Positions 12,392-42,935 are shown, counted from the stretch's first letter. The stretch: 64,000 nucleotides of DNA from IMGVR_UViG_3300042261_002385:248001-312000; one strand, 5' to 3'. Notes: generated by a model from the letters alone, not told the origin. A program made the numbers and translations.

Positions 12392-12639
12392 TTTTTAAAT
12401 ATTTTATTAAGCTTATACTCTCTTCTATCTTCTACTGTAGTTGGTTCAATGAGAAACTCACCATCACAAATTTTTATATTCCATTTGTTGCCAGTAATAC
12501 TATCACGTATAACAAGTTTCTCAACTACAACAGAACCATCAGACTCTACAACAAGTGAATTAGAACCAGCCGCAGATACTTTAAATAGATCGTCATCTAC
12601 AGAATAGATTACTGAATTATTTTTATATTTTGATGCCAT
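12388..12639 (-). CDS. Hypothetical protein
   Basis: ORF in an operon. Ends RREYKLNKIFKK. Confidence 0.55.
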   Translation of the reverse strand: MASKYKNNSVIYSVDDDLFKVSAAGSNSLVVESDGSVVVEKLVIRDSITGNKWNIKICDGEFLIEPTTVEDRREYKLNKIFKK

Positions 12640-13567
12640 TGTCAGGATTATAATTCATAATTAGTAATTCTACACCTTTAGCTTGTTCTGTTTTCAAATC
12701 AGAATTATTTCCACCTTGAGCAGAACTTCTAAAAACTTCTTTTTCAGTCCATACGTATTTATCTTTAGGTAATAACTCTTCTAAAAGTGGAAAATAATAG
12801 TATGAAAGTGACCAACGACACTTAGTCGTTTTAAGTAGCTCAAGTAATCTTCTGTGAGAAGCAGGTCCAAAAACTCCATCTTTATCAGCTCCATACCAGA
12901 ATAATCTCTTCGCATCATCTTCACCTTTAGCCTCATCAAATCGAGCATAAGGTGGGTCTAAATATAGATAAGTATCTTCAGAATCATATTTATTGATTAA
13001 TTCTTCAAAATCAATATTTAAAAATTCAGTTATAGATTGAAGCTTTTGAGTATATTTGTTTTTCTTTAGTTTGTCAATAAGAACCTCTAATTTTAAACGG
13101 TCTTTATCTTTTTTATAACCATTAAAACCAGCTCCTCTTGGATATACAGAATTATGAGCTGATGTAATGAGAAAAGCATAAATAGCAGCTTTTTCAAAAT
13201 CTCCAATTTCAAAATTCATATCGTCTAGAAAGTCATTCTTTTGGTAATCTTTATAAATTCCTTTATAAAAATCCCATTTTTTAAGAGGATCTGTATCAGT
13301 TGTGAACAGCAATGTATTTTTAAGATTTTCTAAGTAAGGCAAGAATTTTTCAGGTTCAGACGCACACTTATATAAGTTCACCTGGTGACGATTTTTGTCA
13401 TTGTAAATGACTGTATCAAATTTTAGTCGATCGTCATCCATATACGTTCCCATTGAACCAGAGAAGGGTTCTAAATATGTTTTGATTCCTGTTTTAGGAA
13501 TTTTAGTATTGATTAATTCTTGAAACACTGAAGAACTTTTTCCTCCAAAATAACTTATTACTGCCAT
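12623..13567 (-). CDS. dam: D12-class N6-adenine DNA methyltransferase
   Basis: SYFGGKS, YLEPFSGS, YND and the catalytic LDPPY. Confidence 0.92.
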   Translation of the reverse strand: MAVISYFGGKSSSVFQELINTKIPKTGIKTYLEPFSGSMGTYMDDDRLKFDTVIYNDKNRHQVNLYKCASEPEKFLPYLENLKNTLLFTTDTDPLKKWDFYKGIYKDYQKNDFLDDMNFEIGDFEKAAIYAFLITSAHNSVYPRGAGFNGYKKDKDRLKLEVLIDKLKKNKYTQKLQSITEFLNIDFEELINKYDSEDTYLYLDPPYARFDEAKGEDDAKRLFWYGADKDGVFGPASHRRLLELLKTTKCRWSLSYYYFPLLEELLPKDKYVWTEKEVFRSSAQGGNNSDLKTEQAKGVELLIMNYNPDNGIKI

Positions 13568-13573
13568 AGTATT

Positions 13574-14092
13574 TTATTTTAATTTATTTTTAATTTCTTC
13601 TTCTATAGAAGGTTTTACGTTTTGTTGAGAAAGTTCTGTTCTAATTCTCATTAGAATCTTACCTAAGTAATTTAATCCACCATTACCACACTTTGGACAA
13701 GAGCAAGAACCCCAGAAATTATCATGCCAATTATTACCTTCAATTAGTTGTAATTCGCCAGTTTCTAAGAGGTCTTGTGCCAGTTTTTGATTTTTAAACT
13801 TTTCTCTAATTCCCCACTCCATAAATCCAAGTTTTTTCTCTTCCCAATCACTTCTGACCTTAACGACTTTACCGACCTTTTTAGCATCTGACGGATCTTT
13901 GATTCTAGCGACTAATTCTCTAAAATCAGGCGCAGTATAATAAACACCATCGATAAACTGCATTCCAGTGACTTTTAGAGCAACGTAGTAGTGCTCAACA
14001 CTCGGATATGTAATACCTTTATGTTCTATTTCACAGGGATAAAAATTACTTAAGAAAACATATCGACCACGAAATGAATTGATATAACTCAT
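13574..14092 (-). CDS. NADAR (YbiA-like) hydrolase
   Basis: FLSNFY, YPSVEHYY, KF..LL.TG..LIE..D.FWG and N.LGKILM.IR motifs. Confidence 0.9.
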   Translation of the reverse strand: MSYINSFRGRYVFLSNFYPCEIEHKGITYPSVEHYYVALKVTGMQFIDGVYYTAPDFRELVARIKDPSDAKKVGKVVKVRSDWEEKKLGFMEWGIREKFKNQKLAQDLLETGELQLIEGNNWHDNFWGSCSCPKCGNGGLNYLGKILMRIRTELSQQNVKPSIEEEIKNKLK

Positions 14093-14096
14093 ACTA

Positions 14097-14124
14097 AATA
14101 TATCAAAGTATATTTAAAAGTTTA
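14097..14124 (-). promoter_or_regulatory. Class II promoter TAAACT-N16-TATATT, 4 nt upstream of the NADAR ATG
   Basis: Read directly from the sequence. Confidence 0.5.
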
Positions 14125-14319
14125 ATAAATCTTCCAATCAGTGATGTGATAAACTCCTCTTTCATCTTGATAAACTTTATTATCATTTTCAAAGAAATCT
14201 GTTTTCAAAACATCATCAACTGTCTTATCAGAAGTTTCTGTCTCAAAATCTAATTCTGGTTCTAATATTTCTTGTTCATATTTGAAATCTTCATATAGCT
14301 TTATCCATTTCATAGTCAA
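14122..14319 (-). CDS. Small acidic protein with the KWIKLYEDF N-terminal tag
   Basis: 65 aa, carries the shared N-terminal motif. Confidence 0.6.
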   Translation of the reverse strand: MTMKWIKLYEDFKYEQEILEPELDFETETSDKTVDDVLKTDFFENDNKVYQDERGVYHITDWKIY

Positions 14320-14321
14320 TA

Positions 14322-15068
14322 TTAATTTTTAAGTATAGGAATTACAACTTCTTCTACAAATTGTTTCATATCTTCAACCGATATTGTATCTAAAGTGTCT
14401 TTTGGAGTATGACAGTTAAATAATAGTTTGAAATCTAAGTAGGTATTATCATCCCATTTGACAATTGATTCTTCTTTATTCTGAGTAGGAGGTAGTGGAT
14501 TTATAACAACCGAGTCTATACCATTTCTTCTGAAAGTAACGGAGTCGTTAAATGGTGTTTTAACAATTGGACAATCAAAAATAGATTTGATATGATTAGT
14601 TAGATTTCCAGGATAATCACCTATGAAAAAGTATTTTCCTCCTTTACCAGTAAGTTCTAAATTTAATACCCATTCGATATTTCCGAAAAATCCATCATTT
14701 ATCAATTCAGAACATCTTTGAGACCCTAAACCACCAACTTCTTCACCATCTAATAAAACAACTGTAATCTCAGGCATCAATTTTTTTATCATAATAGCAT
14801 TAATAACAGACGCTGAGTTATCATTTGCATTATCTATATCAGGATTCACGATATCATGATGAGCAACTACCATTCTACTTGAGTTACCACGTAAGACTAT
14901 ATTAAAACAATTTGATTTACCAGATTGAAATGTGTCTAATTTCCATTCTATTCCAATAGAGTCAAGTAAATTAGTAATGTATTGAACTCTTGGAGTAGGT
15001 TCTAAACCATTTTTATAAACATTACCGATATTTCTAATGGAGCAGAACTCATATATCTTATCATACAT
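14322..15068 (-). CDS. M28-family zinc peptidase
   Basis: AHHD, ANDNSAS, DGEE.G..GS, NLE and CHT..DT motifs. The real start is the ATG at 15068, because the longer ORF call overlaps the tmRNA. Confidence 0.85.
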   Translation of the reverse strand: MYDKIYEFCSIRNIGNVYKNGLEPTPRVQYITNLLDSIGIEWKLDTFQSGKSNCFNIVLRGNSSRMVVAHHDIVNPDIDNANDNSASVINAIMIKKLMPEITVVLLDGEEVGGLGSQRCSELINDGFFGNIEWVLNLELTGKGGKYFFIGDYPGNLTNHIKSIFDCPIVKTPFNDSVTFRRNGIDSVVINPLPPTQNKEESIVKWDDNTYLDFKLLFNCHTPKDTLDTISVEDMKQFVEEVVIPILKN

Positions 15069-15079
15069 AGTGTATATAT

Positions 15080-15105
15080 AAAAAAACCCACTTAAAAAGT
15101 GGGTT
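15080..15105 (-). terminator. Intrinsic terminator after the tmRNA
   Basis: AACCCACT-TTTTA-AGTGGGTT followed by a T-run on the minus strand. Confidence 0.85.
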
Positions 15106-15113
15106 AATCTTTG

Positions 15114-15488
15114 TGGAGATGACGATGTACTGCCCATCGTGTCTTCCCTAGCTAACAATAATTATTCATTCACAGGCTTAGAAAGTTTCTCTAAACTTAC
15201 AAAGTAGTTAGTTGAACAACCCATCACTCTAACAATTCTGGTTTCACATTTTAAACTGTGTGATTCAGCTGGAGAATTTTTGCGATAAGCTTAAAAGATT
15301 AAACTACTGCTAGCTCTTCTACCTTAAGCATGTTGTTTTGTAGCGCCGCTACTAAATCTTCACGGGATGCTACTTCATTTGTTTTGCCATTTACGACTTT
15401 TGCCATCTAATTTATTAGTCGGTTACTTGACCATCCGACACCTGCATAATTACCACTACTCTATGAATCTATACTAAAAAACATCCCC
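15114..15488 (-). ncRNA. ssrA: tmRNA (one-piece, ~375 nt)
   Basis: GGGGAUG/CAUCUCC-A acceptor stem with G3.U70, T-arm ACGAUG-GGCAGUA-CAUCGU, P2 GCAGGU/GCCUGU with an AAGCCUGUGAA motif, and a tag frame UAAAU|GGC...UAA (15388-15299). CCA is not encoded. Confidence 0.9.
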
Positions 15489-15539
15489 ATAGTTTTATAA
15501 TTACAAATGTATATATAATATTTGAAAATATAAAAAAGT

Positions 15540-15806
15540 TTAGAAATTTTCAGAACCTTCTTCGAGTTCATACTCATCAGAATCTAAAGAATTTATAATA
15601 TTCTCAGCCTCTTCATAGGAATCATAATTAATCCAAAGAGAACCTTTACCAAATAATTCCTCAGCGTCAACCGCATCTTTATATGTTAAACCATCAGACA
15701 TCATTTTTGGTGTGAGAGCAAATATTCTAAAAGAATCACCAACTCTGTTTATAAAATATTTAACTTTATCGTTACTAAAATCTTCAAATAATTTAATGTA
15801 TTTCAT
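15540..15806 (-). CDS. Small protein with the MKYIKLFEDF N-terminal tag
   Basis: 88 aa, carries the shared N-terminal motif. Confidence 0.65.
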   Translation of the reverse strand: MKYIKLFEDFSNDKVKYFINRVGDSFRIFALTPKMMSDGLTYKDAVDAEELFGKGSLWINYDSYEEAENIINSLDSDEYELEEGSENF

Positions 15807-15820
15807 ATTAGTTCTTTTTT

Positions 15821-16402
15821 TTAGAAAGGCATGTTATCATCATCTAATCCTTCATCTAAAGTAAAACCAAAAGTAAGGATTCCTCTATTATCTTTTGACT
15901 GCCACATTTCAAATTCTGAATCATATTGAGCCAATATATCTCTTTTTAATTTGTTAGCGACTTCAAAAACTTTAATTACATTTCTAAGAGTTTCTTTTTT
16001 ACCCATGTAAACCTCTATTAAAATTTCATCATTTTTACGAGCGGTCACTCTTACATCTGAAACTCCAGCATTTCTAAACATCTGTCTTAAAAGATAAGTT
16101 AAATGTTCGATATCATCATCTTGTTCATCTTCATATATGTCATATTCATCGTCATCATCGTCATCATCAAATTTAGGATTTGAAGATTTTCTGCCATATT
16201 TGTTATTATCATCATCGTCATCATACCAATCATCAAAATCTCCATAATCTTTAGTAGAGTCATCAGCATAATCATAATCATCATCATCATCAGGCCATCT
16301 AGCTTCGTTTTTCTTATTAGCCGGTAAATTATCATTAAGATGACTTAAGTCATCTTTTCTAATATTTTCTTTAAGATAGTCTAAAAAATTATTTATGTTC
16401 AT
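15821..16402 (-). CDS. Acidic low-complexity protein with a small C-terminal alpha/beta domain
   Basis: Poly-Asp tracts in the N-terminal half. Confidence 0.6.
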   Translation of the reverse strand: MNINNFLDYLKENIRKDDLSHLNDNLPANKKNEARWPDDDDDYDYADDSTKDYGDFDDWYDDDDDNNKYGRKSSNPKFDDDDDDDEYDIYEDEQDDDIEHLTYLLRQMFRNAGVSDVRVTARKNDEILIEVYMGKKETLRNVIKVFEVANKLKRDILAQYDSEFEMWQSKDNRGILTFGFTLDEGLDDDNMPF

Positions 16403-17934
16403 TATCTCAATTCTATTTTTAAGTAAGTTTCACTAAAGAAACAATCATCCGCTATTTTATATTTTGCTAAGATTGTTTGAACTCTTATCAATGCATCATA
16501 TATTTCAGCCATATCAGACTCTTCTAAGTCTAAACTTACAAATATTCTATCGTCACTACCAACTACTTTAACATCTATACCAAAAACATTTTTCTTAACT
16601 TCATTAATTAGTTCTTTGTGTTTTGCAAACAACTCTTGATTGTATCCGACTTTTCTTTTGACTGGAAGATTATTCCAATCAACTTTTATAGAAGCTTCGG
16701 CTAATTTTTTCAAATAAGTTATATTCTGCATTTCAGTTCCTCTATGTTCATTATAATATCCAACAGATATGTTCGTGCACTCAGCTATATCTTCCATTAG
16801 AGATGCTGAATCAGTATAAACTCCAGTCGTATCTAAAGAAAGATTTAAACCATTTTTGTTATATTCATCACAAAGAGCTTGTGCAAAATCATTTGAACAA
16901 CATTGTCTACCTAATTGGTGAGTAATAACTGACGTGGTTCTTCTTCTATCAAAAGAAACACAATATTTAACATCTGTCAAATAGTCACATTTATCATATA
17001 CAGATGAAAGTGCATTTGAACCAATTCCTCCTCTTTCTTCTCCAATGAAGAAGTAGTAGATACCAGGAACATTGTTAGCCATCATATAAAGCATTACTGT
17101 AGTTCCAGCTTTATCATCGGCTCCAAGTATACTTGAACCATCTGTATAAATTATTTCATCACCTGAACCAGTCTTGATTAGTCTAAATGAATATCCCTCT
17201 TCCTCAACCCTTCCATTTGCTTGAAATAAACGAGTTGTTTTTTGTTCTCTGTCTGCAGTGTCTAAGTGACAAGTAAACATTACCTTTTGTTTATCATTAC
17301 CAATAATCTTATAATAATTACCGACTCTATCTTGTTTTAAATCAGGTAAGAATTTAAGCACTTCTTTTTCATGTCTACAATCAGAAAAATGTGGGTAAGT
17401 TTTAGTAGTAAGTGAAAGAAAAGTTGCTTTAACATCCTTCGGATTGTAACTAAATTCAGGAACAACTATTCTTTGAGCGGACGTGGTATCTTCTTCACCA
17501 ATATTATCAGCTACGATTGCGTTATATTGATGGATAAATGATTTAATCTCATCTTCTGTTAGTAGACCGGGCCAGTAATATCTAAAAAATTTACCAATCT
17601 TCATATCATACTTTTTATCAGCTATTTTCACTTCAAAACAGTATGGTTTTTTTGAAATAGTGACATCACTAATTCCCAATCCATTAAAATATTTAGAACC
17701 CTCTTCTCCTAACCAAAGCATTTCAAAGGCAAGATAGTTGTCATTATCTTCCATATTTTTTAATACTTTACAGAGGTCTTTTGATAATTTTATTTTGATA
17801 CCAGTATCTTTTGTAGATGACTTTGTGTCAAAAATTTCTTCTTTTGATTTATAACCACCACCTGTGTAATTACGTTCACCTGGGAAAGATTGAGTTCCAG
17901 CTTCAAATAGTTGATTATATTTAAATAATTCCAT
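16402..17934 (-). CDS. Zinc peptidase (M28/M20/M42 clan) with an unknown N-terminal domain
   Basis: CHLDT, LGADDKAG, GEERGGIGS, SFDRR, YTDS, NISVGYYNEH..E motifs. Confidence 0.85.
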   Translation of the reverse strand: MELFKYNQLFEAGTQSFPGERNYTGGGYKSKEEIFDTKSSTKDTGIKIKLSKDLCKVLKNMEDNDNYLAFEMLWLGEEGSKYFNGLGISDVTISKKPYCFEVKIADKKYDMKIGKFFRYYWPGLLTEDEIKSFIHQYNAIVADNIGEEDTTSAQRIVVPEFSYNPKDVKATFLSLTTKTYPHFSDCRHEKEVLKFLPDLKQDRVGNYYKIIGNDKQKVMFTCHLDTADREQKTTRLFQANGRVEEEGYSFRLIKTGSGDEIIYTDGSSILGADDKAGTTVMLYMMANNVPGIYYFFIGEERGGIGSNALSSVYDKCDYLTDVKYCVSFDRRRTTSVITHQLGRQCCSNDFAQALCDEYNKNGLNLSLDTTGVYTDSASLMEDIAECTNISVGYYNEHRGTEMQNITYLKKLAEASIKVDWNNLPVKRKVGYNQELFAKHKELINEVKKNVFGIDVKVVGSDDRIFVSLDLEESDMAEIYDALIRVQTILAKYKIADDCFFSETYLKIELR

Positions 17935-17950
17935 AGAGTATATATTAAAT

Positions 17951-18520
17951 TTAAATATGTATTATATTTCTATCTTTATTCTCTATGAATGCTCTACCCA
18001 CGGTCGGTTGATGAGATTCAATAAAAGCATCTTCTTCTTTGGTTCTATAACTTTTATTTTTTAGTTCTTTTATTTTATTTTCAACTTCGATTGGTGGATT
18101 AATACTCACCCTATCTTTGTAACACCAAACTATCTCAGCGAAATTGTTATCTTTGGCTTTGCTGTTCTTTTTAGCAATCTCTGCTGCTTTTTTTAGAATG
18201 TGGTCTGGAATAATATCATCTTTAATTGCTTTAACTAAAACGTGACTTCCCGGATATCCGGATGCATGTAACCAAATGTCCTGAACACTCGAAGCAACTC
18301 CTCCGATAGATTTAGCATATTTACCACAAAAATTACTAGTCAAAAAATGATTTGACTCTTTATTTCTACCCCAGTAAACATCATATGAATTATCAAGATT
18401 CAAATCGTCTATGATTTTTTTATGTTTTATATCAACACCACTCTTACTGAACTCTTTTAATTGACTGTTTATGAGATTTTCTTTTAATACAAAATCACTG
18501 TAATTTCTAGTTATCTTCAT
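17951..18520 (-). CDS. Stand-alone NFACT-R (RqcH/Rqc2 C-terminal RNA-binding) domain protein
   Basis: YWGRNKESNHFLT, DIWLHASGYPGSHVLVK and AAEIAKKNSKAK match RqcH VGKNN.QN..LT, DIWLH.K.IPGSHV and AA..AA..SKAK. Start is the ATG at 18520. Confidence 0.85.
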   Translation of the reverse strand: MKITRNYSDFVLKENLINSQLKEFSKSGVDIKHKKIIDDLNLDNSYDVYWGRNKESNHFLTSNFCGKYAKSIGGVASSVQDIWLHASGYPGSHVLVKAIKDDIIPDHILKKAAEIAKKNSKAKDNNFAEIVWCYKDRVSINPPIEVENKIKELKNKSYRTKEEDAFIESHQPTVGRAFIENKDRNIIHI

Positions 18521-18547
18521 AACATATATATAAATTATCTTAAACAA

Positions 18548-18592: not shown

Positions 18593-19321
18593 TTAACTCA
18601 AATTGAATACAAAACTTTCAAGTTGACCGAAGTTAGTAGCACTAACAGGAACAGTAATAGTCGTTACACCACCAGACCAAGTTCCACTATAATATGCAGT
18701 TGAATGTGTCCAAGCATTTGAAGGTGTGCCTGAACCTGAAGGTAGAATCTTTGCAATTTGGTTATTGTAGTAAGCTCCAGTTGAAGCGGGTGCTTGTATA
18801 ATAAGTGAATTACCACTTGTTGTTGCTGTAGCTCCAGTAGGTAATGCAACAATGTTAGCCGCTAAAGTAGCAACGGCAGTTTCTGCACTTTGAGTAGCTG
18901 AAAAAGTATATCCAAATGGTCCAAAAATATTCCAGTTTGATGCTGTTACAGAACCAGTACCGTGTGATCCCCAGACTTGTATTTTGACGTTTGTTGCGTG
19001 AGCTAGAAGAGCTCCTGAACCTCCTGTAGCTGTTCCACCGAATGTAAAAGTAGCGGTCGCTGGTGAAAAAGTAGGTGCTACACCATTCGCTCCAGTAAGG
19101 TTATTAGATGATGTTCCATTAACATTCGCTGAAAATGTAAAATTACCACTATCTTCAGTTAAAAATCGTCCATCTGTCAAAGATATAGTTCTAGATTCCG
19201 TGAATCCAGCAACTGTAAGAGATGTTTCACCTCTTAGTCTCAAAGCTGTAACATCAAAAGTGATGACATCAGTTGTGCTGTTATAACTAGCAGAGTTAAT
19301 GTTTATGTAAGGTCTTGACAT
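18593..19321 (-). CDS. Ser/Thr/Gly-rich beta protein downstream of the capsid gene, candidate decoration protein
   Basis: Structural-protein composition, its own late-type promoter, and its position next to the capsid gene. Confidence 0.45.
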   Translation of the reverse strand: MSRPYININSASYNSTTDVITFDVTALRLRGETSLTVAGFTESRTISLTDGRFLTEDSGNFTFSANVNGTSSNNLTGANGVAPTFSPATATFTFGGTATGGSGALLAHATNVKIQVWGSHGTGSVTASNWNIFGPFGYTFSATQSAETAVATLAANIVALPTGATATTSGNSLIIQAPASTGAYYNNQIAKILPSGSGTPSNAWTHSTAYYSGTWSGGVTTITVPVSATNFGQLESFVFNLS

Positions 19322-19435: not shown

Positions 19436-21208
19436 TTAGTTCAAGTATTGATTACCATCAACAACTTTAATAGTCATAAATTGTTTTTGTGGATACCAAC
19501 CAACTTCAGTTACTGCATATCTAGATCTTAGTAACATTCTTGGTGCGAATGTTGCCTCAGAAATGATAGAGATTGATTGAGCCATCAAATAAGGAACGAA
19601 AATGATACCTGGTTGGTCAGGATTGTTCTTTCTACCAAGAACGATTCTGTTATCGTTATATCTCATATATGGGTCAACATAGATAGAAATATCACCGATA
19701 GAACCTACTGGGTAAAGTTGACCAGAAGCATTCATTTTAGCTTTAACTGGATTAATAGTATAACCAGAGATATCAGAAAGAGCTGCAGCAAGACCCCCGT
19801 TTGTGATAAGGTATTGAGCTGGACCTACACGACCTTCAGTAGCGATGTAGTTAGAAGCGTGAGCAATCTTAGTGATAAGTTTTCTTTGAACAGCGTGAGT
19901 TGTCTCACCACCGATACCACCACCTGCAGTTACATATGATGTATCTAAGTCAAAGATTGTTGGACTAGTAACTCCTGTGTAAGCAGCAGGACCAGAGTAA
20001 AGTGGAGCTGTAGTTCTGTTCAAATCACCCAATTCAAAGATTTTAGCAACGATTTGCTTAGAAATTGTTTGAGATAATTCGTTAACAAGAATTGATTCCA
20101 TTTTTTGAACGATATCCATACCTGTGTTAGCTTTGATATCTTCGATTTCAGTTCTTCTAAGAGCTGAAGATACTTCAATAGTACCTACTGCTACTGACTT
20201 AGAAGAAATTTTAGGACCGATAACTCCAGCATAACTGTTATCATCTGTGTCTCTATCCATTGGATAGTTACCATTGAAACCATCACCACCTTGAGTCCAG
20301 TTTGCAGAGAAACCAGGGATGTGATCTTCAAGAGCTGAAATCAACTCAATTGAAGCGAATCCACTGTTAATTGTAATTCCAGCTACACTTGTGATTTGAG
20401 AAATCATTGATTGTGTAGGGTTGAATGAGTTTCTATTTTGGTCAAAACTCCACATCGCAAGTGTTCCTGTAGTAGAAGTGTAAGGATTTGTTCCTGTATG
20501 AGCAGTGTTAGCTTGTCTGTAAGCTTTGAACATAGGGAAACCATCGATACGAGAGAAACCTAAGAACTCAACAATACCTTGTTTAGAAGCTGTTCCATTC
20601 AATGTAGTTGAAATAGTTGAACCTAAGTTATTTTGTCCTGTAGTTCCTAATGAGAAAAAGAATTGTCCATTTTGTAAACCACCAGAAGACTGAAGGATAG
20701 TAGCTCCGTTTCCAGTTTGCATAGCAGTTGCTAACGTAGATGATGTAGCACCAGCGTTTAATTTAAATACTTGTGGTCTTTCATCAGCGTCACCAGATTT
20801 AGTGTCGTCATAACGGAAATCTACATAAAGTAAATCGATTTTCGGACCTGGAGATGGCTTAACAGCAACAAGGTCAAGTCCGATAGTTTGAGCTGCGATT
20901 TTCATTGCAACTGGTAATAAGTTTTGACCAACATCACCAGAACCAGCAACACCACCTGAACCATATGAGAATGATGTAGCAGAGTTACCGTAAGGTGAAG
21001 TTTGACCAGCAAGTGTAGATGGTTGTGGAGATACAACACTACCCATACCTGATACGTTAGAAGCGTTAACGTAAGCGTTCTCGTTGATTGAGTGGAATTC
21101 AGCATATTCAGCCATCCATTCCATTCTATCACCAGTAACACCCATGTTTTCCAAAACTGGAGACCACTTCTTAATAGCTTTTGATTTGTCTATTCTAATG
21201 TGTGACAT
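19436..21208 (-). CDS. gp23: Major capsid protein, T4 gp23-like
   Basis: KKWSPVLE, AAQTIGLDLVAVKP, EDIKANTGMD, ELSQTISKQI, VGSIG..YVDPY and FVPY..PRMLLRSRY motifs. Confidence 0.95.
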   Translation of the reverse strand: MSHIRIDKSKAIKKWSPVLENMGVTGDRMEWMAEYAEFHSINENAYVNASNVSGMGSVVSPQPSTLAGQTSPYGNSATSFSYGSGGVAGSGDVGQNLLPVAMKIAAQTIGLDLVAVKPSPGPKIDLLYVDFRYDDTKSGDADERPQVFKLNAGATSSTLATAMQTGNGATILQSSGGLQNGQFFFSLGTTGQNNLGSTISTTLNGTASKQGIVEFLGFSRIDGFPMFKAYRQANTAHTGTNPYTSTTGTLAMWSFDQNRNSFNPTQSMISQITSVAGITINSGFASIELISALEDHIPGFSANWTQGGDGFNGNYPMDRDTDDNSYAGVIGPKISSKSVAVGTIEVSSALRRTEIEDIKANTGMDIVQKMESILVNELSQTISKQIVAKIFELGDLNRTTAPLYSGPAAYTGVTSPTIFDLDTSYVTAGGGIGGETTHAVQRKLITKIAHASNYIATEGRVGPAQYLITNGGLAAALSDISGYTINPVKAKMNASGQLYPVGSIGDISIYVDPYMRYNDNRIVLGRKNNPDQPGIIFVPYLMAQSISIISEATFAPRMLLRSRYAVTEVGWYPQKQFMTIKVVDGNQYLN

Positions 21209-37847: not shown

Positions 37848-40800
37848 TTAAATTTCTATCCAAGTATTATCAGGACAGAAGTATATAGTATTACTAGATA
37901 TCGCAAAACCAACTATTCTAATTATATCAAGTGTTGCAGTAGGAGCAGATTGTGTCATCGAACCAGCGACTGTGGATAAGTAAATTGCTCCTCCAACAGT
38001 CCAAGACCAAGAAGTATTTTCTACATAACCTCTAAGTAGCATACCAGAACTAGGTGTAGCACCTAAAGCTAACGATATAAGACCAGTTGCCGAAGACGCC
38101 GCATCGGCATCCGTAGCAGCCCAAGTAGAAGTAGATGTAAAATAGTAGGTGCTAAATGTCGCAATCGAAGTAGCAGCATTACCAAATGTTACAATGTCAC
38201 CATAACCACCATTAGCACTTAATACTGTTAATGGATTGTGTGTGAACCTATATCCACCGGATACACTTACTGTTCCTGTTACACCAAGTGTATTACCATC
38301 AAATGTTAAATTCGATTCAACTGTTGCGTTAGGAGCAGTAGAATCTAAAGTTATAAGACCATTATTAGTAGTCCCGGTCAGTGATAATAATCCACTAGTT
38401 CCAGAGGTTCCATTGGCACCATTAACTACCCATGATAAAGTATATGTTCTTCCACTTGTCAGTGAGCCATTACCACTTACATATGTTACAGAAATATCAA
38501 AATAAGTTGTGTTATTTTGCATATTAGAAATTCGAAAATGACCAATAACACTATTACTTCCAACTTCAGTTATCTGTAAAGTAGTTCTGGTAACGTATGA
38601 ACTAGTAATAAGTAAATTCCACCAAGCATTATAATTAGTAGTGTTTGAGTAATCTGTTTGGTGCACTGAAACCTTAATAATAGAAGATATAGTACTGGAA
38701 TCAGTTCTAAAGTATGTAGCTCCTGGGTCAGACCAAGCGAGAGTTGAGTCATAAAACCATCTACCACTATTTGAACCGTCATTTCCAGTTCCGGAAGTTC
38801 CTGATGTTCCAGCGCCTGATGTTCCTGATGTTCCGGTGGTTCCGGAAGAACCGGAAGTTCCTGATGTTCCTGATGTTCCAGTGGTTCCGGAAGAACCGGA
38901 AGTTCCTGATGTTCCAGTGGTTCCGGAAGAACCGGAAGTTCCTGATGTTCCTGATGTTCCAGTGGTTCCGGAAGAACCGGAAGTTCCTGATGTTCCAGTG
39001 GTTCCGGAAGAACCGGAAGTTCCTGATGTTCCTGATGTTCCAGTGGTTCCGGAAGAACCGGAAGTTCCAGTTGTGCCAGAAGTTCCTCTTGTCCCAGAAG
39101 ATCCACTAGTGCCGGAAGATCCACTAGTGCCGGAAGATCCACTTGAACCAGAAGATCCACTTGAACCAGAAGATCCACTTGAACCAGAAGATCCACTTGA
39201 ACCTGAAGATCCACTTGTGCCGGATGTTCCAGCAGCTGAGTTAATTGTTAATATATTTCCATTTGAGTCAAATCCAAGAGCTCCAAGCGCGGAACCTGGG
39301 AAATTACTTACATTATTATAACTTGGTAGTTGTAATTGACCAGTGATGTGATTTATTTGTAAATCCACAGCACTTGAAGTTGTATCAGATCCTTTTAATA
39401 TTCTAAAAGAATTCTGATAATTATCAATAGAAGATGCAGTGTTATAAACACCACCTCCAGACTGAAGTGTGATTTGACCTCCCTCACCAGAACCTGATCT
39501 TGCTCCTAAAAATAAATTTGCTTCAGTAGATGTCGTAGTTGTTCCAATAGCGACTGAGATTGAATTCTGAGTCGAAGACTGAGTAACTGTCAAATATGTC
39601 GCACCAACAGCAGAGTTTACCGAACCGTCAGATAACAGGACACGAAGGTTTCCAGGATTCGAAATTGTGTTAAAACCAGTTCCAGATGTACCACTTGTAC
39701 CCGAGCTACCACTTGAACCAGAGCTACCACTTGAACCTGAAGATCCACTTGAACCAGAGCTACCACTTGTACCCGAGCTACCACTTGAACCAGAGCTACC
39801 ACTTGAACCTGAAGATCCACTTGAACCAGAGCTACCACTAGTGCCGGAAGTTCCACTTGTGCCAGAAGATCCACTTGAACCTGAAGATCCACTTGAACCA
39901 GAGCTACCACTAGTGCCGGAAGTTCCACTTGTGCCAGAAGATCCACTTGAACCTGAAGATCCACTTGAACCAGAGCTACCACTAGTCCCGGAAGTTCCAG
40001 AACTACCAGAAGTTCCAGATGAACCACTAGTGCCGGATGTTCCGGGAACTGAAGCTGTCCAGAATGCCAAACCTGTCGCATCGGACATTAATATGTAGTT
40101 TGCCTGAGCTCCGGTAGTTAACTTAATTTGAGAGGCTGTAATTCCATTAACTCTCAAATTAGAATAAGACGAAATAGTAATATCACCCTGAGTCGTTGCA
40201 GAATTATTAGTTGAAACAGCAGCAAACTCATCAGCTGATTCATCCCAAATAAATGCTTGAGTTGCTCCAGTTCCTCGATTCACCATAAATCCAGAGTCTA
40301 ATGTTGGTGACCCAGATTGAGTTGATGCTAAAAGTATCAACGGATCTTGAACAGTAAGATTTGTTGTGTTGACTGTTGTAGCCGTTCCACTTATAGTCAA
40401 ATTACCAGAGACAGTGACGTTACCAGTTACCGCTAGTGTTGTGCCATCAAAGGTTAGATTAGATTCAACAGTAGCGTTTGGAGCTGATCCATCTAAAGTT
40501 ATAACTCCATTATTTGTTGTTCCAGTTAGTGATAATAAACCGCTAGAACCGGAGGTTCCTCTTGTACCTGAGGATCCAGAGGAACCACTAGAACCGGATG
40601 TTCCAGAAGATCCACTAGAACCTGATGAACCGGAAGAACCACTTGAACCTGATGTTCCACTTGTTGCGGAAGTTCCAGATGAACCAGAAGAACCACTAGA
40701 ACCAGAAGTTCCAGAGGAACCACTAGAACCAGAAGATCCACTAGAACCGGATGTCCCAGAGGAACCACTAGAACCAGAAGATCCGCTAGAACCGGATGTC

Positions 40801-42935
40801 CCAGAGGAACCTGAGGTGCCAGAAGTACCATTTGGACCAGCCACATTAAAACTAACAAAACATAAATCGTTGTTAGTAAAATTCGCATCACTAATAACAT
40901 TATTTAGTGTAATAGTCCACCAACCAGTGTTATCAGTAGTAGCACTGAACTCATAAGTTTGAAACCAAGTCAGGTCTGTCTGTTTAGTTATCTTAATGAA
41001 TCCTCTTCTAGAAACAGAACCGTAGTTTGATAATGAATTAAAAAATCCTTGTAAATCATTACTGAAACTATCAAATCGATCAATATATAGTGACGTAGCA
41101 CTACCCATCGTCAAGTTGTTTAATCTAAATATACCAACTCCTGGATCCCCAGCAGTCGTTGTAGTGCTATAAGTATATTCGAAACTAGCGGAGTCTATAC
41201 CATTAGCACCAGAGCTTCCAGATGTGCCAGATGAACCAGATGTTCCTCTCGAACCAGAAGTGCCAGAAGAACCAGAAGTGCCAGAGGTACCGGAAGTTCC
41301 TGAAGAACCTGAGGTGCCGGATGATCCACTCGAACCAGAAGTTCCTGAAGAACCTGAGGTGCCGGAAGTTCCAGAGGTGCCGGAAGTTCCGGATGAACCA
41401 GAGGAACCACTTGATCCAGAAGAACCTGAAGATCCAGAAGAACCACTTGATCCAGAAGAACCTGAAGATCCAGAAGAACCACTTGATCCAGAGGTGCCAG
41501 AGGTGCCTGATGTTCCCGAGGAACCAGAGGTGCCGCTAGAACCCGAGGTACCTGATGATCCACTCGAACCAGAAGTGCCAGAAGAGCCTGAGGTGCCGCT
41601 AGAACCTGAAGTGCCACTAGTACCAGAAGATCCACTAGAGCCAGAGGAACCACTCGAACCGGAAGTTCCTGATGTTCCGGAAGTTCCGCTAGAACCAGAA
41701 GATCCAGAGGTCCCGGATGTTCCAGGGATAGAAGCTGTCCAAAATGCTAATCCTGTTGCATCAGACATTAGTATGTAGTTTGCTTGAGCACCAGTAGTTA
41801 TCTTTATTTGAGATGTTGTTATACCAGCAGCTCTGAAATTAGAATAAGCAGTTATAGTAACGTCGCCCTGTGTTGTCGCTGAATTGTTAGTAGTTATTAC
41901 AGAAAACTCATCAGCTGATTCATCCCAAATAAATGCTTGAGTTGCCCCGGTTCCTCGATTTATCATGAACCCAGAGTCCAATGTGGGTGCTCCTGATTGT
42001 GTAGATGCTAATAATATTATAGGGTCCTGAACTGTTAAATTAGTTGTGTTGACTGTTGTTGCCGTTCCACTTATAGTTAAATTACCAGAGACAGTGACGT
42101 TACCAGTTACCGCTAATGTCGAACCATCGAAAGTCAGATTCGACTCAACAGTAGCATTAGGAGCCGAACCATCTAAGGTTATTACACCATTATTAGTTGT
42201 TCCTGTCAAACTTAGAGATCCACTGGATCCAGATGTGCCACTAGATCCAGAAGAGCCGGAAGAACCAGATGTTCCAGAAGACCCGGAAGTTCCAGATGTA
42301 CCACTTGTGCCTGATGAACCGGATGTACCACTTGTTCCAGAAGACCCACTAGATCCAGAAGACCCGCTAGATCCTGAGGAACCACTTGTGCCTGATGAAC
42401 CACTTGTGCCTGATGAACCACTTGTGCCTGATGAACCGGATGTGCCACTTGAACCAGATGACCCAGTTGTACCACTTGTTCCAGAAGACCCGCTAGATCC
42501 TGAGGAACCACTTGTGCCTGATGAACCGGATGTACCGCTTGAACCAGATGATCCAGATGAGCCACTTGAACCTGATGATCCGGATGTACCACTAGTTCCA
42601 CTAATACCAGATACAACTGATAAAACCCAATTGGTTCCATTACTTTCTAATGTTATTGATTGATACTGTGTGAGAGTTTGTGTTAAAGATCCATCTATTG
42701 TTTGAGAAAGAACTGTATTTACCGTTATTGTGCCGGATCCGCTGTTTTTTACAACATATATTTTACCGGCTATACTAACAGCAGATGGCAACGTAACTGT
42801 AAAAGTTCCAGAGCAGTCAATAAAATAATCAGTATCGATTATAGTATATGTAGATGTCTTACTTACATATGGAAAAGTTATTCCACCTAAAGATACGAGA
42901 CCTCTTCTGGTCACAAATTCGTTTGTTCCTGCCAT
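37848..42935 (-). CDS. 1695-aa fibre protein with Gly-[Ser/Thr]-Ser tracts and repeated beta modules
   Basis: Five G-X-Y tracts, two full and one truncated LSLTGTTNNG...AFWTAS modules, and a phage fibre-like C-terminus. Confidence 0.8.
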   Translation of the reverse strand: MAGTNEFVTRRGLVSLGGITFPYVSKTSTYTIIDTDYFIDCSGTFTVTLPSAVSIAGKIYVVKNSGSGTITVNTVLSQTIDGSLTQTLTQYQSITLESNGTNWVLSVVSGISGTSGTSGSSGSSGSSGSSGSSGTSGSSGTSGSSGSSGSSGTSGTTGSSGSSGTSGSSGTSGSSGTSGSSGTSGSSGSSGSSGSSGSSGTSGTSGSSGTSGTSGTSGSSGTSGSSGSSGSSGTSGSSGSLSLTGTTNNGVITLDGSAPNATVESNLTFDGSTLAVTGNVTVSGNLTISGTATTVNTTNLTVQDPIILLASTQSGAPTLDSGFMINRGTGATQAFIWDESADEFSVITTNNSATTQGDVTITAYSNFRAAGITTSQIKITTGAQANYILMSDATGLAFWTASIPGTSGTSGSSGSSGTSGTSGTSGSSGSSGSSGSSGTSGTSGSSGTSGSSGTSGSSGSSGTSGSSGTSGSSGTSGTSGTSGSSGSSGSSGSSGSSGSSGSSGSSGSSGSSGSSGTSGTSGTSGTSGSSGTSGSSGSSGTSGSSGTSGTSGTSGSSGTSGSRGTSGSSGTSGSSGANGIDSASFEYTYSTTTTAGDPGVGIFRLNNLTMGSATSLYIDRFDSFSNDLQGFFNSLSNYGSVSRRGFIKITKQTDLTWFQTYEFSATTDNTGWWTITLNNVISDANFTNNDLCFVSFNVAGPNGTSGTSGSSGTSGSSGSSGSSGSSGTSGSSGSSGSSGSSGTSGSSGSSGSSGTSATSGTSGSSGSSGSSGSSGSSGTSGSSGSSGSSGTRGTSGSSGLLSLTGTTNNGVITLDGSAPNATVESNLTFDGTTLAVTGNVTVSGNLTISGTATTVNTTNLTVQDPLILLASTQSGSPTLDSGFMVNRGTGATQAFIWDESADEFAAVSTNNSATTQGDITISSYSNLRVNGITASQIKLTTGAQANYILMSDATGLAFWTASVPGTSGTSGSSGTSGSSGTSGTSGSSGSSGSSGSSGSSGTSGTSGTSGSSGSSGSSGSSGSSGTSGTSGTSGSSGSSGSSGSSGSSGSSGSSGTSGSSGSSGSSGSSGSSGSSGSSGTSGTSGTGFNTISNPGNLRVLLSDGSVNSAVGATYLTVTQSSTQNSISVAIGTTTTSTEANLFLGARSGSGEGGQITLQSGGGVYNTASSIDNYQNSFRILKGSDTTSSAVDLQINHITGQLQLPSYNNVSNFPGSALGALGFDSNGNILTINSAAGTSGTSGSSGSSGSSGSSGSSGSSGSSGSSGSSGTSGSSGTSGSSGTRGTSGTTGTSGSSGTTGTSGTSGTSGSSGTTGTSGTSGSSGTTGTSGTSGTSGSSGTTGTSGTSGSSGTTGTSGTSGTSGSSGTTGTSGTSGAGTSGTSGTGNDGSNSGRWFYDSTLAWSDPGATYFRTDSSTISSIIKVSVHQTDYSNTTNYNAWWNLLITSSYVTRTTLQITEVGSNSVIGHFRISNMQNNTTYFDISVTYVSGNGSLTSGRTYTLSWVVNGANGTSGTSGLLSLTGTTNNGLITLDSTAPNATVESNLTFDGNTLGVTGTVSVSGGYRFTHNPLTVLSANGGYGDIVTFGNAATSIATFSTYYFTSTSTWAATDADAASSATGLISLALGATPSSGMLLRGYVENTSWSWTVGGAIYLSTVAGSMTQSAPTATLDIIRIVGFAISSNTIYFCPDNTWIEI
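38836..39067 (-). repeat. Exact alternating 45/36-bp (81-bp period) tandem repeat inside a G-X-Y tract
   Basis: Units start at 38836, 38881, 38917, 38962, 38998 and 39043. Confidence 0.9.

What the first reader, a model, noticed from the sequence alone, without database searches (positions are those of the whole stretch)
15114..15488. Unannotated tmRNA with a GGCAGUA T-loop and a 29-codon tag ending LAVV
This is a one-piece tmRNA with the Ala identity pair G3.U70. Its T-loop is GGCAGUA (as I recall, the signature of two-piece alphaproteobacterial tmRNAs rather than UUCRANU) on a 6-bp stem. The resume codon GGC at 15388 has U at -5 and A at -4, as in E. coli. The tag reads (A)GKTNEVASREDLVAALQNNMLKVEELAVV*, about three times the usual length, with an internal LVAA and no terminal Ala-Ala ClpX degron. 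It may free ribosomes while sparing or rerouting the product. An in-frame AUG 6 codons upstream (15406) could also yield a free 35-aa peptide.
Basis: partly seen in the sequence, partly recalled or inferred. Interest (0 to 1): 0.75.

Follow-up and report, generated by a model that had tools for sequence, protein, structure and literature searches.

The report
Hidden tmRNA of huge freshwater phages
The window holds a real, expressed ribosome-rescue RNA (tmRNA) of a 436-kb phage that also encodes the partner protein SmpB; standard tmRNA finders miss it because its T-loop is unusual, and its tag is three times the usual length and lacks the usual Ala-Ala degradation ending.

Summary
On the minus strand, 15488-15114 has a 7-bp acceptor stem with G3.U70, discriminator A, a 6-bp T stem with loop GGCAGUA, and a start-less 29-codon frame (GGC at 15388 to UAA at 15299). 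ARAGORN and Rfam RF00023 both find nothing. Comparative evidence still shows a tmRNA.

- About 70 homologous loci (48 distinct sequences) occur in metagenomic phage contigs, including two 634-642 kb GenBank phages.
- Compensatory changes support the acceptor, T stem, long P2 helix, PK1, PK2 and PK4.
- The tag frame is open in 48/48 sequences and is always 84, 87 or 90 nt. It has no upstream in-frame start codon in 27/48.
- Cousins with the same T arm pass RF00023 (51-108 bits).
- The phage and five large relatives all encode SmpB, and none has a canonical tmRNA.
- In four metatranscriptomes, contigs cover only 15118-15472 and not the flanks.

The upstream AUG is not conserved and lies inside PK1. 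The fate of tagged proteins is unknown: no tag ends in Ala-Ala, and these phages carry their own Clp unfoldase and, in 5 of 6 genomes, ClpP genes. I rate this a new structural variant of a known kind.

The parts
15504..15540 (-). Promoter-like element: AACTTTT, a spacer, TATTATATATA, overlapping TAcaTTTG. It ends about 15-20 nt upstream of G1, which implies a short 5' leader.
   Evidence: The motif pair occurs once in the 64-kb window, at this gene. A similar AACTTTTT ... A/T-rich TATATA element lies upstream of most family members by eye; TAnnTTTG is present in 26 of 43. Promoter function is inferred.
15114..15488 (-). tmRNA gene, 375 nt from G1 to discriminator A375. CCA is not encoded; the next bases are CAA.
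   Evidence: Sequence. 48 distinct homologues aligned. Covariation. RNA-run contigs confined to 15118-15472.
15482..15488 (-). Acceptor stem, 5' strand GGGGAUG (RNA positions 1-7), with G3 of the G3.U70 pair.
   Evidence: 100% canonical pairing in 48 sequences. Pairs 5 and 6 show compensatory changes (A-U, G-C, C-G; U-A, A-U). G3.U is invariant.
15465..15475 (-). D-loop analogue AGUAUAGAUUC (positions 14-24). It corresponds to the GGAUUC of canonical tmRNA, with W-G in place of G-G.
   Evidence: Alignment and variant counts. The correspondence to E. coli is from my own knowledge of its sequence.
15440..15467 (-). P2 helix, 5' strand (positions 22-49; sections P2a, P2b, P2c).
   Evidence: RNAalifold predicts it. 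P2a-ii, P2b and P2c are 94-100% canonical against 1-49% in slid controls, with 11 pairs showing double changes. P2a-i is not discriminated: 95% against 85-99%.
15402..15439 (-). Pseudoknot PK1: P3 is 50-54/67-71 and P4 is 58-61/84-87. The non-conserved AUG (15406-15404) lies in the P4 3' strand.
   Evidence: P3 is 100% canonical with 2 covarying pairs. P4 is 91% canonical with 3 covarying pairs. Slid controls are 1-49%.
15389..15393 (-). Conserved UAAAU upstream of the resume codon (positions -5 to -1).
   Evidence: UAAAY in 47 of 48 sequences. The same UAAAC/UAAAA precedes GCA/GAC in Rfam-positive cousins. ARAGORN's resume-consensus routine picks this site when its thresholds are lowered.
15299..15388 (-). 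Tag reading frame: resume codon GGC (15388-15386), 29 sense codons, stop UAA (15301-15299).
   Evidence: The frame is open in 48/48, while both other frames are closed in 48/48. Length is 84, 87 or 90 nt only, while flanks vary by single bases. The stop is TAA in 47 and TAG in 1. There is no in-frame ATG/GTG/TTG upstream in 27/48.
15341..15372 (-). Hairpin 1 inside the tag frame: outer stem 117-120/145-148, inner stem 124-127/140-143, and a 12-nt loop GAAGAUUUAGUA.
   Evidence: 94-96% canonical. All 4 inner pairs covary (CCGU/GCGG, CAAG/CUUG, CAAA/UUUG).
15313..15329 (-). Hairpin 2 inside the tag frame (160-165/171-176).
   Evidence: 88% canonical, with 5 pairs showing double changes.
15244..15270 (-). 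Pseudoknot PK2 (stem 1 is 219-223/231-235; stem 2 is 226-230/241-245).
   Evidence: Stem 1 is 87% canonical with 3 covarying pairs. Stem 2 is 75%.
15207..15243 (-). Variable region with a possible PK3 in the window sequence.
   Evidence: Not supported across the alignment: 48-53% canonical, the same as slid controls. The region is poorly alignable.
15177..15200 (-). Pseudoknot PK4 (stem 1 is 289-293/304-308; stem 2 is 294-298/308-312).
   Evidence: Stem 1 is 92% canonical with 5 covarying pairs. Stem 2 is 85%.
15145..15177 (-). P2 helix, 3' strand (positions 312-344).
   Evidence: As for the 5' strand.
15122..15140 (-). T arm: 6-bp stem ACGAUG/CAUCGU with the 7-nt loop GGCAGUA (15134-15128).
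   Evidence: The stem is 97% canonical with 3 covarying pairs. The loop is GGCAGUA in 31/48, and all variants keep GGC plus R-G/A.
15114..15121 (-). Acceptor stem 3' strand CAUCUCC (with U70) and discriminator A (15114).
15078..15105 (-). Intrinsic terminator: a 9-bp hairpin followed by a U tract.
   Evidence: Terminator scan. A hairpin plus U tract follows the 3' end in most family members by eye.

Best explanation
This is a functional, phage-encoded one-piece tmRNA (ssrA) of a divergent lineage carried by huge freshwater phages. It works together with the phage's own SmpB.

Shown:
- The RNA has its own promoter-like element and terminator.
- It is present in metatranscriptomes as a discrete species.
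- It folds into the tmRNA architecture: a tRNA-Ala-like domain, a long P2 helix, PK1, a start-less tag frame, PK2 and PK4.
- It co-occurs with a full-length SmpB gene in genomes that have no other tmRNA.

Inferred:
- The 5' leader is removed by host RNase P.
- The 3' end is trimmed and CCA is added by the host enzyme. The phage encodes neither a CCA-adding enzyme nor AlaRS.
- Host AlaRS charges the RNA through G3.U70.
- The phage SmpB-tmRNA complex enters stalled ribosomes, for example on mRNAs cut during infection.
- Translation resumes at GGC (15388) and adds Ala plus 29 residues, ending at UAA.

The tag ends in hydrophobic Val or Ala but never in Ala-Ala. The tagged product is therefore probably not handled like a canonical LAA-tagged protein. 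I think it most likely still marks products for proteolysis, by another route. Candidates are the phage's own ClpC/ClpA-like unfoldase with ClpP, or host Lon or Prc.
For: - Sequence features.
- Homologues: about 70 loci in IMG/VR contigs plus LR745206.1 and LR756502.1.
- Structure: RNAalifold recovers the acceptor, P2, P3, the T arm and two tag hairpins, and 24 of 48 pairs show compensatory changes. In my own pair counts on the corrected alignment, the supported helices are 87-100% canonical (PK2 stem 2 75%, PK4 stem 2 85%) against 1-74% in slid controls (mostly under 50%); P2a-i is not discriminated by the controls. 2-5 pairs per helix covary in P1, P12, P2b, P2c, P3, P4, PK2 and PK4.
- Tag frame: open in 48/48, lengths only 84/87/90 nt, stop conserved, and no upstream start in 27/48.
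- Link to recognised tmRNAs: Rfam-positive phage tmRNAs share the same T arm, the UAAAY resume motif and the 3' domain.
- SmpB: present in the window's genome at G000:C1:79293-79718, scoring 175 bits against Pfam and 178 bits against the NCBIfam equivalog. It aligns to A. aeolicus SmpB over residues 3-142, including the C-terminal tail.
- Co-occurrence: SmpB is in 5/5 other large relatives, and none of the 6 genomes has RF00023 above cut-off.
- Expression: in four RNA runs from three studies, contigs cover only 15118-15472 and there is zero depth in the 1.6 kb and 2 kb flanks.
- Host dependence: no phage AlaRS or CCA-adding enzyme.
Against: - RF00023 gives no hit even at E<=10 on 1 kb, or at E<=1 on nine other members. 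ARAGORN finds nothing at its default thresholds.
- The T-loop lacks U54, U55 and A58 of the canonical T-loop motif. The T stem plus acceptor is 13 bp rather than 12, so folding of the elbow and binding of EF-Tu and SmpB are unproven.
- CCA is not encoded.
- Selection at the amino-acid level is only weakly visible. pN/pS is 0.61 against 0.67 and 0.76 in the other frames. Third-position entropy is higher with p=0.076.
- PK3 is not supported.
- RNA evidence comes from assembled contigs, which give no strand information and do not map the ends.
- No aminoacylation, tagging or proteolysis data exist.
Confidence: 0.82

Rival explanations
1. It is a tmRNA-derived decoy. Its tRNA-like domain titrates host SmpB or AlaRS, or blocks host trans-translation, as proposed for the TLD-only RNA of mycobacteriophage DS6A. 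The tag frame would not be translated.
For: The odd T-loop and the missing encoded CCA could mean loss of normal function. A TLD-only phage RNA that inhibits tmRNA is on record (PMC4131195, PMC11915505).
Against: The frame stays open in 48/48 with only 3n length changes and a conserved stop. PK1, the resume motif, PK2 and PK4 are all maintained by covariation. The phage also carries its own full-length SmpB, which a decoy against host SmpB would not need.
Confidence: 0.07
2. It is an mRNA for a small 29-35 aa protein made by ordinary initiation (for example from AUG 15406), with structured untranslated regions that happen to resemble a tRNA.
For: The window has an in-frame AUG 6 codons upstream. 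The peptide core EDLV..LQNN is conserved.
Against: An upstream in-frame ATG is present in only 2 of 48 members by my own count (3 by the table), and 27 of 48 have no ATG/GTG/TTG before the previous stop. One-base indels lie just upstream of the frame. The AUG is buried in PK1 stem P4. The covarying acceptor and T arm with an invariant G3.U70, and the linked SmpB gene, would have no explanation.
Confidence: 0.03
3. It is a passively carried remnant: a host ssrA copy picked up by imprecise excision, or an attachment-site duplicate, now decaying.
For: tmRNA genes are common integration sites, and fragments occur in prophages (PMC9004378). IMG/VR labels the record 'provirus'.
Against: - The gene is full length, has its own promoter-like element and terminator, and is expressed.
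- It is under structural selection across about 70 loci in conserved synteny next to structural genes.
- The T-arm pattern is virtually absent from 185,579 bacterial and archaeal species genomes. There were 5 hits: 4 on MAG contigs of 2.7-47 kb (three under 7 kb) and 1 by chance.
Confidence: 0.03

Closest known systems
Canonical one-piece bacterial tmRNA (SsrA, Rfam RF00023, e.g. E. coli)
   Same: A 7-bp acceptor stem with G3.U70 and discriminator A. A T arm abutting the acceptor, no anticodon arm, and a long P2 helix. PK1 before a start-less tag frame with U(-5)A(-4). Pseudoknots after the stop. An SmpB partner. Length about 375 nt.
   Different: The T-loop is GGCAGUA instead of UUCRANY. The T stem is 6 bp, giving a 13-bp acceptor/T stack. 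The D-loop analogue has W-G instead of G-G. The tag is 27-29 aa rather than the commonest 10 aa (PMC11915505), ends in V or A and never in AA, and holds two covarying hairpins, with the stop outside a helix. It is not found by RF00023 or ARAGORN.
Rfam-positive metagenomic phage tmRNAs with the same GGCNGUN T arm (loci L154, L126, L166, L099, L164, L137, L182, L184)
   Same: An identical T-arm/acceptor pattern (GAC-A-NNNNG-GGCNGUN-CNNNN-U). A UAAAY resume motif. A shared 3' domain motif UGUGAAUGAAUA (nhmmer E as low as 1e-9). Also missed by ARAGORN. Tags I read as about 10-33 aa.
   Different: They score 51-108 bits on RF00023, encode CCA, have a GAUUCGAC D-loop analogue and mostly sit in tRNA arrays. 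Their tags end in canonical or near-canonical degrons (YALAA, LLAA, IAA, AVA).
Known phage tmRNAs (Bxz1-like mycobacteriophages, Bacillus phage G, two-piece tmRNA of Melnitz and pelagimyophages)
   Same: Phage-borne ssrA, sometimes with smpB, in large or T4-like phages. The proposed role is to keep the hijacked translation apparatus running (PMC4131195, PMC9004378, PMC7162821).
   Different: Those were all found with ARAGORN or Rfam, so they have canonical T-loops. This family is invisible to both tools and has no match among GenBank phage isolates.
Mycoplasma tmRNA with a 27-aa tag read by Lon
   Same: An unusually long tag that does not end in LAA and is rich in hydrophobic residues. It is a precedent for switching protease specificity (PMC8403727).
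   Different: It is a cellular tmRNA with a canonical tRNA-like domain, and its tag sequence is unrelated. The phage genome here has no Lon, but has three ClpP-like genes and a ClpC/ClpA-like unfoldase.
Jakobid mitochondrial tmRNA (Reclinomonas americana)
   Same: The first two T-loop positions are G-G instead of U-U (PMC1168896).
   Different: It is a two-piece, reduced RNA without a tag frame. There is no evidence of relatedness.

Membership tests
tmRNA (biological class) | tRNA-Ala-like acceptor stem of 7 bp with G3.U70 and discriminator A | tested here: met
   100% canonical pairing, G.U invariant in 48/48, and compensatory changes at pairs 5 and 6.
tmRNA (biological class) | T arm directly 5' of the acceptor 3' strand | tested here: met
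   the stem is 97% canonical with 3 covarying pairs.
tmRNA (biological class) | Canonical T-loop sequence (UUCRANY) | tested here: not met
   GGCAGUA, with the GGC core invariant. This is not strictly defining, because RF00023-positive cousins carry the same loop and the Reclinomonas mitochondrial tmRNA has GG (PMC1168896).
tmRNA (biological class) | 3' CCA end | tested here: inconclusive
   The gene encodes CAA after the discriminator. Most members have CAA or CUA, and a few have CCA. Post-transcriptional addition is assumed, and the RNA-run contigs do not reach the end.
tmRNA (biological class) | Long P2 helix joining the tRNA-like domain to a ring of pseudoknots, with no anticodon arm | tested here: met
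   P2a-ii, P2b and P2c are 94-100% canonical, with 11 covarying pairs.
tmRNA (biological class) | PK1 upstream of the resume codon | tested here: met
   P3 is 100% and P4 is 91% canonical, with 5 covarying pairs.
tmRNA (biological class) | Short reading frame without a start codon, with a conserved upstream U-A motif and an in-frame stop | tested here: met
   ARAGORN's resume-consensus routine picks the same site.
tmRNA (biological class) | Pseudoknots PK2-PK4 downstream of the stop | tested here: inconclusive
   PK2 and PK4 are supported. PK3 is no better than the slid controls.
tmRNA (biological class) | SmpB partner available | tested here: met
   SmpB is encoded by the same phage and by 5/5 large relatives.
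tmRNA (biological class) | Stable discrete RNA | tested here: met
   Contigs from four metatranscriptomes are confined to 15118-15472. The ends are not mapped.
tmRNA (biological class) | Charged with alanine; adds the tag to stalled nascent chains | not testable with these tools
   Needs biochemistry or mass spectrometry.
Rfam RF00023 (tmRNA covariance model) | Score of at least 47 bits | tested here: not met
   No hit at gathering, at E<=10 on 1 kb, or at E<=1 on nine other members. I therefore do not file it under RF00023 as currently modelled.
ARAGORN tmRNA | Detected at default thresholds | tested here: not met
   Only at -ps60 does it report a tmRNA, with spurious boundaries but the same tag.
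SmpB (NCBIfam NF003843 / TIGR00086, Pfam PF01668), the partner protein outside the window | Score above the curated equivalog cut-off, full length with the C-terminal tail | tested here: met
   177.9 bits against a cut-off of 130. Aligns to 1p6v over residues 3-142.

The most novel reading that the evidence does not exclude
These huge phages may run a private trans-translation and proteolysis circuit. A tmRNA with a remodelled elbow (T-loop GGCAG paired with a W-G D-loop) would be served preferentially by the phage's own SmpB. Its 27-29-aa tag, conserved as G-x-x-N-E-V-x-x-x-E-D-L-V-x-A-L-Q-N-N-M and ending in V or A, would not be read by host ClpXP. Instead it would be read by phage-encoded factors: the ClpC/ClpA-like unfoldase with ClpP, or the conserved neighbouring metallopeptidase. 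Alternatively the tag could serve a purpose other than degradation. Either way the phage would control the fate of rescued products independently of the host. The neighbouring solo NFACT-R (RqcH-like) protein would then belong to the same ribosome-rescue module.
Probability: 0.2. Interest if true: 0.85.

Novelty: new variant of a known kind. Interest (0 to 1): 0.62.

Why it matters
- **Surveys undercount phage tmRNAs.** Phage tmRNA surveys rely on ARAGORN (PMC7162821, PMC9004378). That tool misses this whole lineage, about 70 loci here, including two of the largest published phage genomes. It also misses the Rfam-positive cousins. Some huge phages annotated with smpB but no ssrA probably do have a partner RNA.
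- **It is a natural experiment on the tRNA elbow.** The RNA shows that the tmRNA elbow can dispense with U54, U55 and A58 of the T-loop, and so with the TrmA and TruB target positions (my inference), and can carry a 13-bp acceptor/T stack. This gives a natural test case for what SmpB, EF-Tu and the ribosome really require.
- **The tag is testable.** A long, conserved tag without a ClpX-type end, in phages that carry their own Clp machinery, allows a direct test of whether a virus can redirect the fate of rescued proteins.
- **A practical gain.** The 48-sequence alignment could seed a new covariance model.

Tried and rejected
- **Faulty first scan.** My first collection scan had one N too many in the pattern and returned nothing. 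That result is meaningless.
- **Unrelated hits to the 5' motif.** The 5' motif TTATGCAGGTNTCGGNTGGT also hits an unrelated protein-coding gene in about 45 other viral contigs. I excluded these by requiring GGGGNNG upstream.
- **Chance T-arm hits.** Four T-arm pattern hits (L095, L110, L119, L139) and the Dehalococcoidia chromosome hit (L183) are chance matches in GC-rich coding DNA.
- **Single-sequence folding.** It is uninformative: z = -0.87.
- **Coding tests.** The pN/pS comparison between frames and the third-position entropy gave only weak support for amino-acid selection. I rest the coding claim on frame preservation instead.
- **PK3.** My proposed PK3 pairing does not hold across the family.
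- **Weak Rfam matches.** The sub-threshold matches near the 3' end (Trp/Thr leaders, toxic sRNA) only reflect the terminator hairpin.
- **Proteins sought in the phage genome.** AlaRS, a CCA-adding enzyme, Lon and ClpX were not found.
- **Structure-counting tool.** I did not type a 407-character structure string into it. Pair counts were computed in Python instead.
- **Complex prediction.** None was run. RNA jobs get no verdict, and neighbourhood alone did not justify a tag-peptidase job.
- **Host identity.** It was not established. A Bacteroidota-type TAnnTTTG motif upstream in 26 of 43 members is only a hint.

Full report
**1. Observation**

- GGGGAUG at the 5' end pairs with CAUCUCC just before a discriminator A, giving G3.U70.
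- Directly 5' of that strand lies ACGAUG-GGCAGUA-CAUCGU, a 6-bp stem with a 7-nt loop.
- GGC at 15388 is preceded by UAAAU.
- It opens a frame of 29 sense codons ending at UAA (15301-15299).
- The gene is followed by CAA rather than CCA, then an intrinsic terminator at 15105-15085.

ARAGORN finds nothing in the whole window. Rfam finds nothing at gathering thresholds. Even a permissive scan of 1 kb at E<=10 gives no tmRNA match. Single-sequence folding is uninformative, with z = -0.87.

**2. What the genome is**

The window is bases 248001-312000 of a 436,265-bp IMG/VR virus record estimated 95% complete. It is about 30% G+C and carries a T4-type major capsid gene at 19436-21208.

The only GenBank phage matches to the locus are two uncultured phages of 634,780 bp and 642,428 bp, LR745206.1 and LR756502.1. 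They match at 78% and 69% identity, and the match is confined to the RNA itself. From my own memory, these sizes correspond to the huge phages of Al-Shayeb et al. 2020. That study used ARAGORN alone for tmRNAs (PMC7162821).

Public runs holding the sequence are lake, river, freshwater, drinking-water and wastewater metagenomes.

**3. A family**

Two pattern scans of IMG/VR plus pairing filters gave about 70 loci and 48 distinct sequences of 363-383 nt. They lie on contigs of up to 483 kb. ARAGORN detects none of them. Rfam detects none of nine tested at E<=1.

The same T-arm pattern also picked up six other phage RNAs that do pass RF00023:
- L154 scores 108 bits.
- L126 scores 78 bits.
- L166 scores 76 bits.
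- L099 scores 61 bits.
- L164 scores 55 bits.
- L137 scores 51 bits.

ARAGORN misses these too. They share three things with the window's family:
- The GAC-A-stem-GGCNGUN-stem-U-acceptor arrangement.
- A UAAAY motif before the resume codon.
- A 3' domain motif lying beyond the search pattern, with nhmmer E values from 1e-9 to 3e-3.

This ties the window's RNA to bona fide tmRNAs by homology.

In 185,579 bacterial and archaeal species genomes, the T-arm pattern occurs five times. Four hits are on MAG contigs of 2.7-47 kb (three under 7 kb), and one is a chance match. No GenBank phage isolate resembles the cousins. The variant T arm is therefore, as far as these collections show, a feature of uncultured phages.

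**4. Structure**

RNAalifold on the 48-sequence alignment recovers the acceptor, a three-section P2 helix, PK1 stem P3, two hairpins inside the frame, and the T arm. Of 48 predicted pairs, 24 show compensatory double changes.

MAFFT misplaced the 5' end of sequences that have two extra U after the acceptor. After correcting this, I counted pairs for each proposed helix, including pseudoknot stems, against controls with the 3' strand slid by 1-2 columns:

| Helix | Canonical pairs | Pairs with double changes |
|---|---|---|
| P1 acceptor | 100% | 2 |
| T stem | 97% | 3 |
| P2b | 94% | 5 |
| P2c | 100% | 3 |
| P3 | 100% | 2 |
| P4 | 91% | 3 |
| PK2 stem 1 | 87% | 3 |
| PK4 stem 1 | 92% | 5 |

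Slid controls for these eight helices gave 1-74%, mostly under 50%. One further section, P2a-i, is not discriminated by the controls (95% against 85-99%). A PK3 could not be supported.

The architecture is that of a one-piece tmRNA. The departures are:
- The T-loop (GGCAGUA in 31/48, always with a GGC core).
- An invariant extra A-U at the base of the T stem.
- A D-loop analogue with W-G where E. coli has G-G (the comparison is from my own knowledge).

**5. The tag frame**

From the aligned GGN (or once GAC) codon, the frame is open in 48/48 sequences. Both other frames are closed in 48/48.
- Frame length is only 84, 87 or 90 nt, while the segments on either side vary by single bases.
- The stop is TAA in 47 and TAG in 1.
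- Only 2 of 48 sequences by my own count (window and L117; L086 carries a far-upstream ATG as well) have an in-frame ATG upstream.
- 27 of 48 have no ATG, GTG or TTG before the previous stop, which can be as close as 4 codons.

So the frame is read, but not by ordinary initiation.

Evidence for the resume site:
- UAAAY precedes the codon in 47/48, matching E. coli's U(-5)A(-4).
- The same motif precedes the resume codon in the Rfam-positive cousins.
- ARAGORN's resume-consensus routine picks the same site and tag once its thresholds are lowered, although its reported gene boundaries there are spurious.

Amino-acid-level selection is only weakly detectable. Part of the reason is that two covarying hairpins inside the frame force amino-acid changes. 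Even so, several substitutions in unpaired codons are synonymous or conservative: CUA/UUA/CUC, CAA/CAG, AAC/AAU, and Leu-Val changing to Met-Ile.

Tags are 27-29 aa long. The core is nearly invariant: E-V-x-x-x-E-D-L-V-x-A-L-Q-N-N-M/L. They end in V (28) or A (20) and never in AA.

**6. Partner and expression**

The phage encodes a 144-aa SmpB at G000:C1:79293-79718, about 184 kb from the RNA.
- It scores 175 bits on Pfam and 178 bits on the NCBIfam equivalog model.
- It aligns over residues 3-142 to Aquifex SmpB, including the C-terminal tail.

All five other near-complete relatives carrying the RNA also encode SmpB. None of the six genomes has an RF00023 hit above cut-off. The cryptic RNA is therefore the only candidate partner.

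I laid four metatranscriptome runs from three studies on 13500-17500. They place contigs only between 15118 and 15472, with zero depth across both protein-coding flanks. One contig is 340 nt long with no mismatch. That argues for a discrete, abundant RNA rather than DNA carry-over. Strand and exact ends are not resolved.

**7. Mechanism and open points**

The most likely reading is ordinary trans-translation run by a phage-supplied tmRNA-SmpB pair. Host RNase P, a host CCA-adding enzyme and host AlaRS would supply processing and charging, since no phage homologues were found.

What happens to tagged proteins is open. The hydrophobic V/A end without AA argues against canonical ClpX recognition. 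The phage has no Lon or ClpX. It does have three ClpP-like genes, one of them 2 kb from smpB, and a 710-aa ClpC/ClpA-like unfoldase. The unfoldase is present in 5/5 relatives and ClpP in 4/5. The Mycoplasma precedent, a 27-aa tag read by Lon (PMC8403727), shows that tag and protease can co-evolve.

**8. Context**

The RNA sits in conserved synteny. The minus-strand order is:
- gp23 capsid (19436-21208)
- an unassigned 242-aa ORF (18593-19321)
- NFACT-R protein (17951-18547)
- 510-aa metallopeptidase (16402-17934)
- 193-aa protein (15821-16402)
- an 88-aa ORF (15540-15806)
- tmRNA (15114-15488)
- NADAR (13574-14092)
- D12 methyltransferase (12623-13567)

The flanking genes were recovered in 37-57 of 73 family loci. 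An M28 peptidase (14322-15068), lying between the tmRNA and NADAR, is an insertion seen only here and in L046.

**9. Verdict**

The free-peptide idea is rejected, and the functional speculation remains untested. It is a new structural variant of a known kind. It also exposes a blind spot in the tools used to annotate phage genomes.

Noticed in passing
window 17951-18547 (-): A 198-aa protein with a solo NFACT-R_1 domain (Pfam 32.9 bits). Residues 86-139 match residues 478-528 of B. subtilis RqcH, the ribosome-quality-control Ala-tailing factor (E = 3e-4). It lies 2.5 kb upstream of the tmRNA and is recovered in 37 of 73 family loci, so a second ribosome-rescue-related gene may belong to the same neighbourhood.
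   Followed up: partly
window 16402-17934 (-) and 14322-15068 (-): Two metallopeptidase genes flank the tmRNA. The first is a 510-aa protein (PHROG 4191 'peptidase', E = 2e-65, weakly PepT/M28-like) conserved in 49 of 73 loci. The second is a 248-aa M28 peptidase found only here and in L046, so it is an insertion. Any link to the tag is speculation.
   Followed up: partly
window 13574-14092 (-) and 12623-13567 (-): A NADAR-domain protein (88 bits) and a D12-class N6-adenine DNA methyltransferase lie directly downstream of the tmRNA. They are conserved in 57 and 45 of 73 loci and are probably anti-defence functions.
   Followed up: no
window 37848-42935 (-) and 43033-52200 (-): Two giant ORFs of 1695 and 3055 aa are made largely of collagen triple-helix repeats (Pfam 277 and 633 bits). 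They account for the jump in G+C from about 30% to 42-47% between 38 and 52 kb.
   Followed up: partly
G000:C1:31500-35000 (L186:545-2677 -), G000:C1:81468-81875, 326602-327129, 385942-386466: Outside the window, the phage encodes a 710-aa ClpC/ClpA-like double-AAA+ unfoldase with a UVR motif and three ClpP-like proteases. One ClpP lies beside a sigma-70-family gene, 2 kb from smpB. The unfoldase is in all five large relatives and ClpP in four.
   Followed up: partly
L099 3977-4048 (+): ARAGORN calls a tRNA-SeC (anticodon UCA) in the tRNA array of a phage contig that carries an Rfam-positive cousin tmRNA. It could be a UGA suppressor or a selenocysteine tRNA.
   Followed up: no
window 15504-15540 (-): A promoter-like element (AACTTTT, spacer, TATTATATATA, overlapping TAnnTTTG) is unique to this gene within the 64-kb window and recurs upstream of the RNA in most family members. 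The TAnnTTTG part resembles the Bacteroidota -7 motif (my own knowledge) and may hint at the host.
   Followed up: partly
L011, L012, L015 and about 40 other loci: The 20-nt 5' motif of the RNA also matches a conserved stretch (translating to about D-Y-A-G-F-G-W) of an unrelated protein-coding gene in many other viral contigs. This is a coincidence of sequence, not homology.
   Followed up: no
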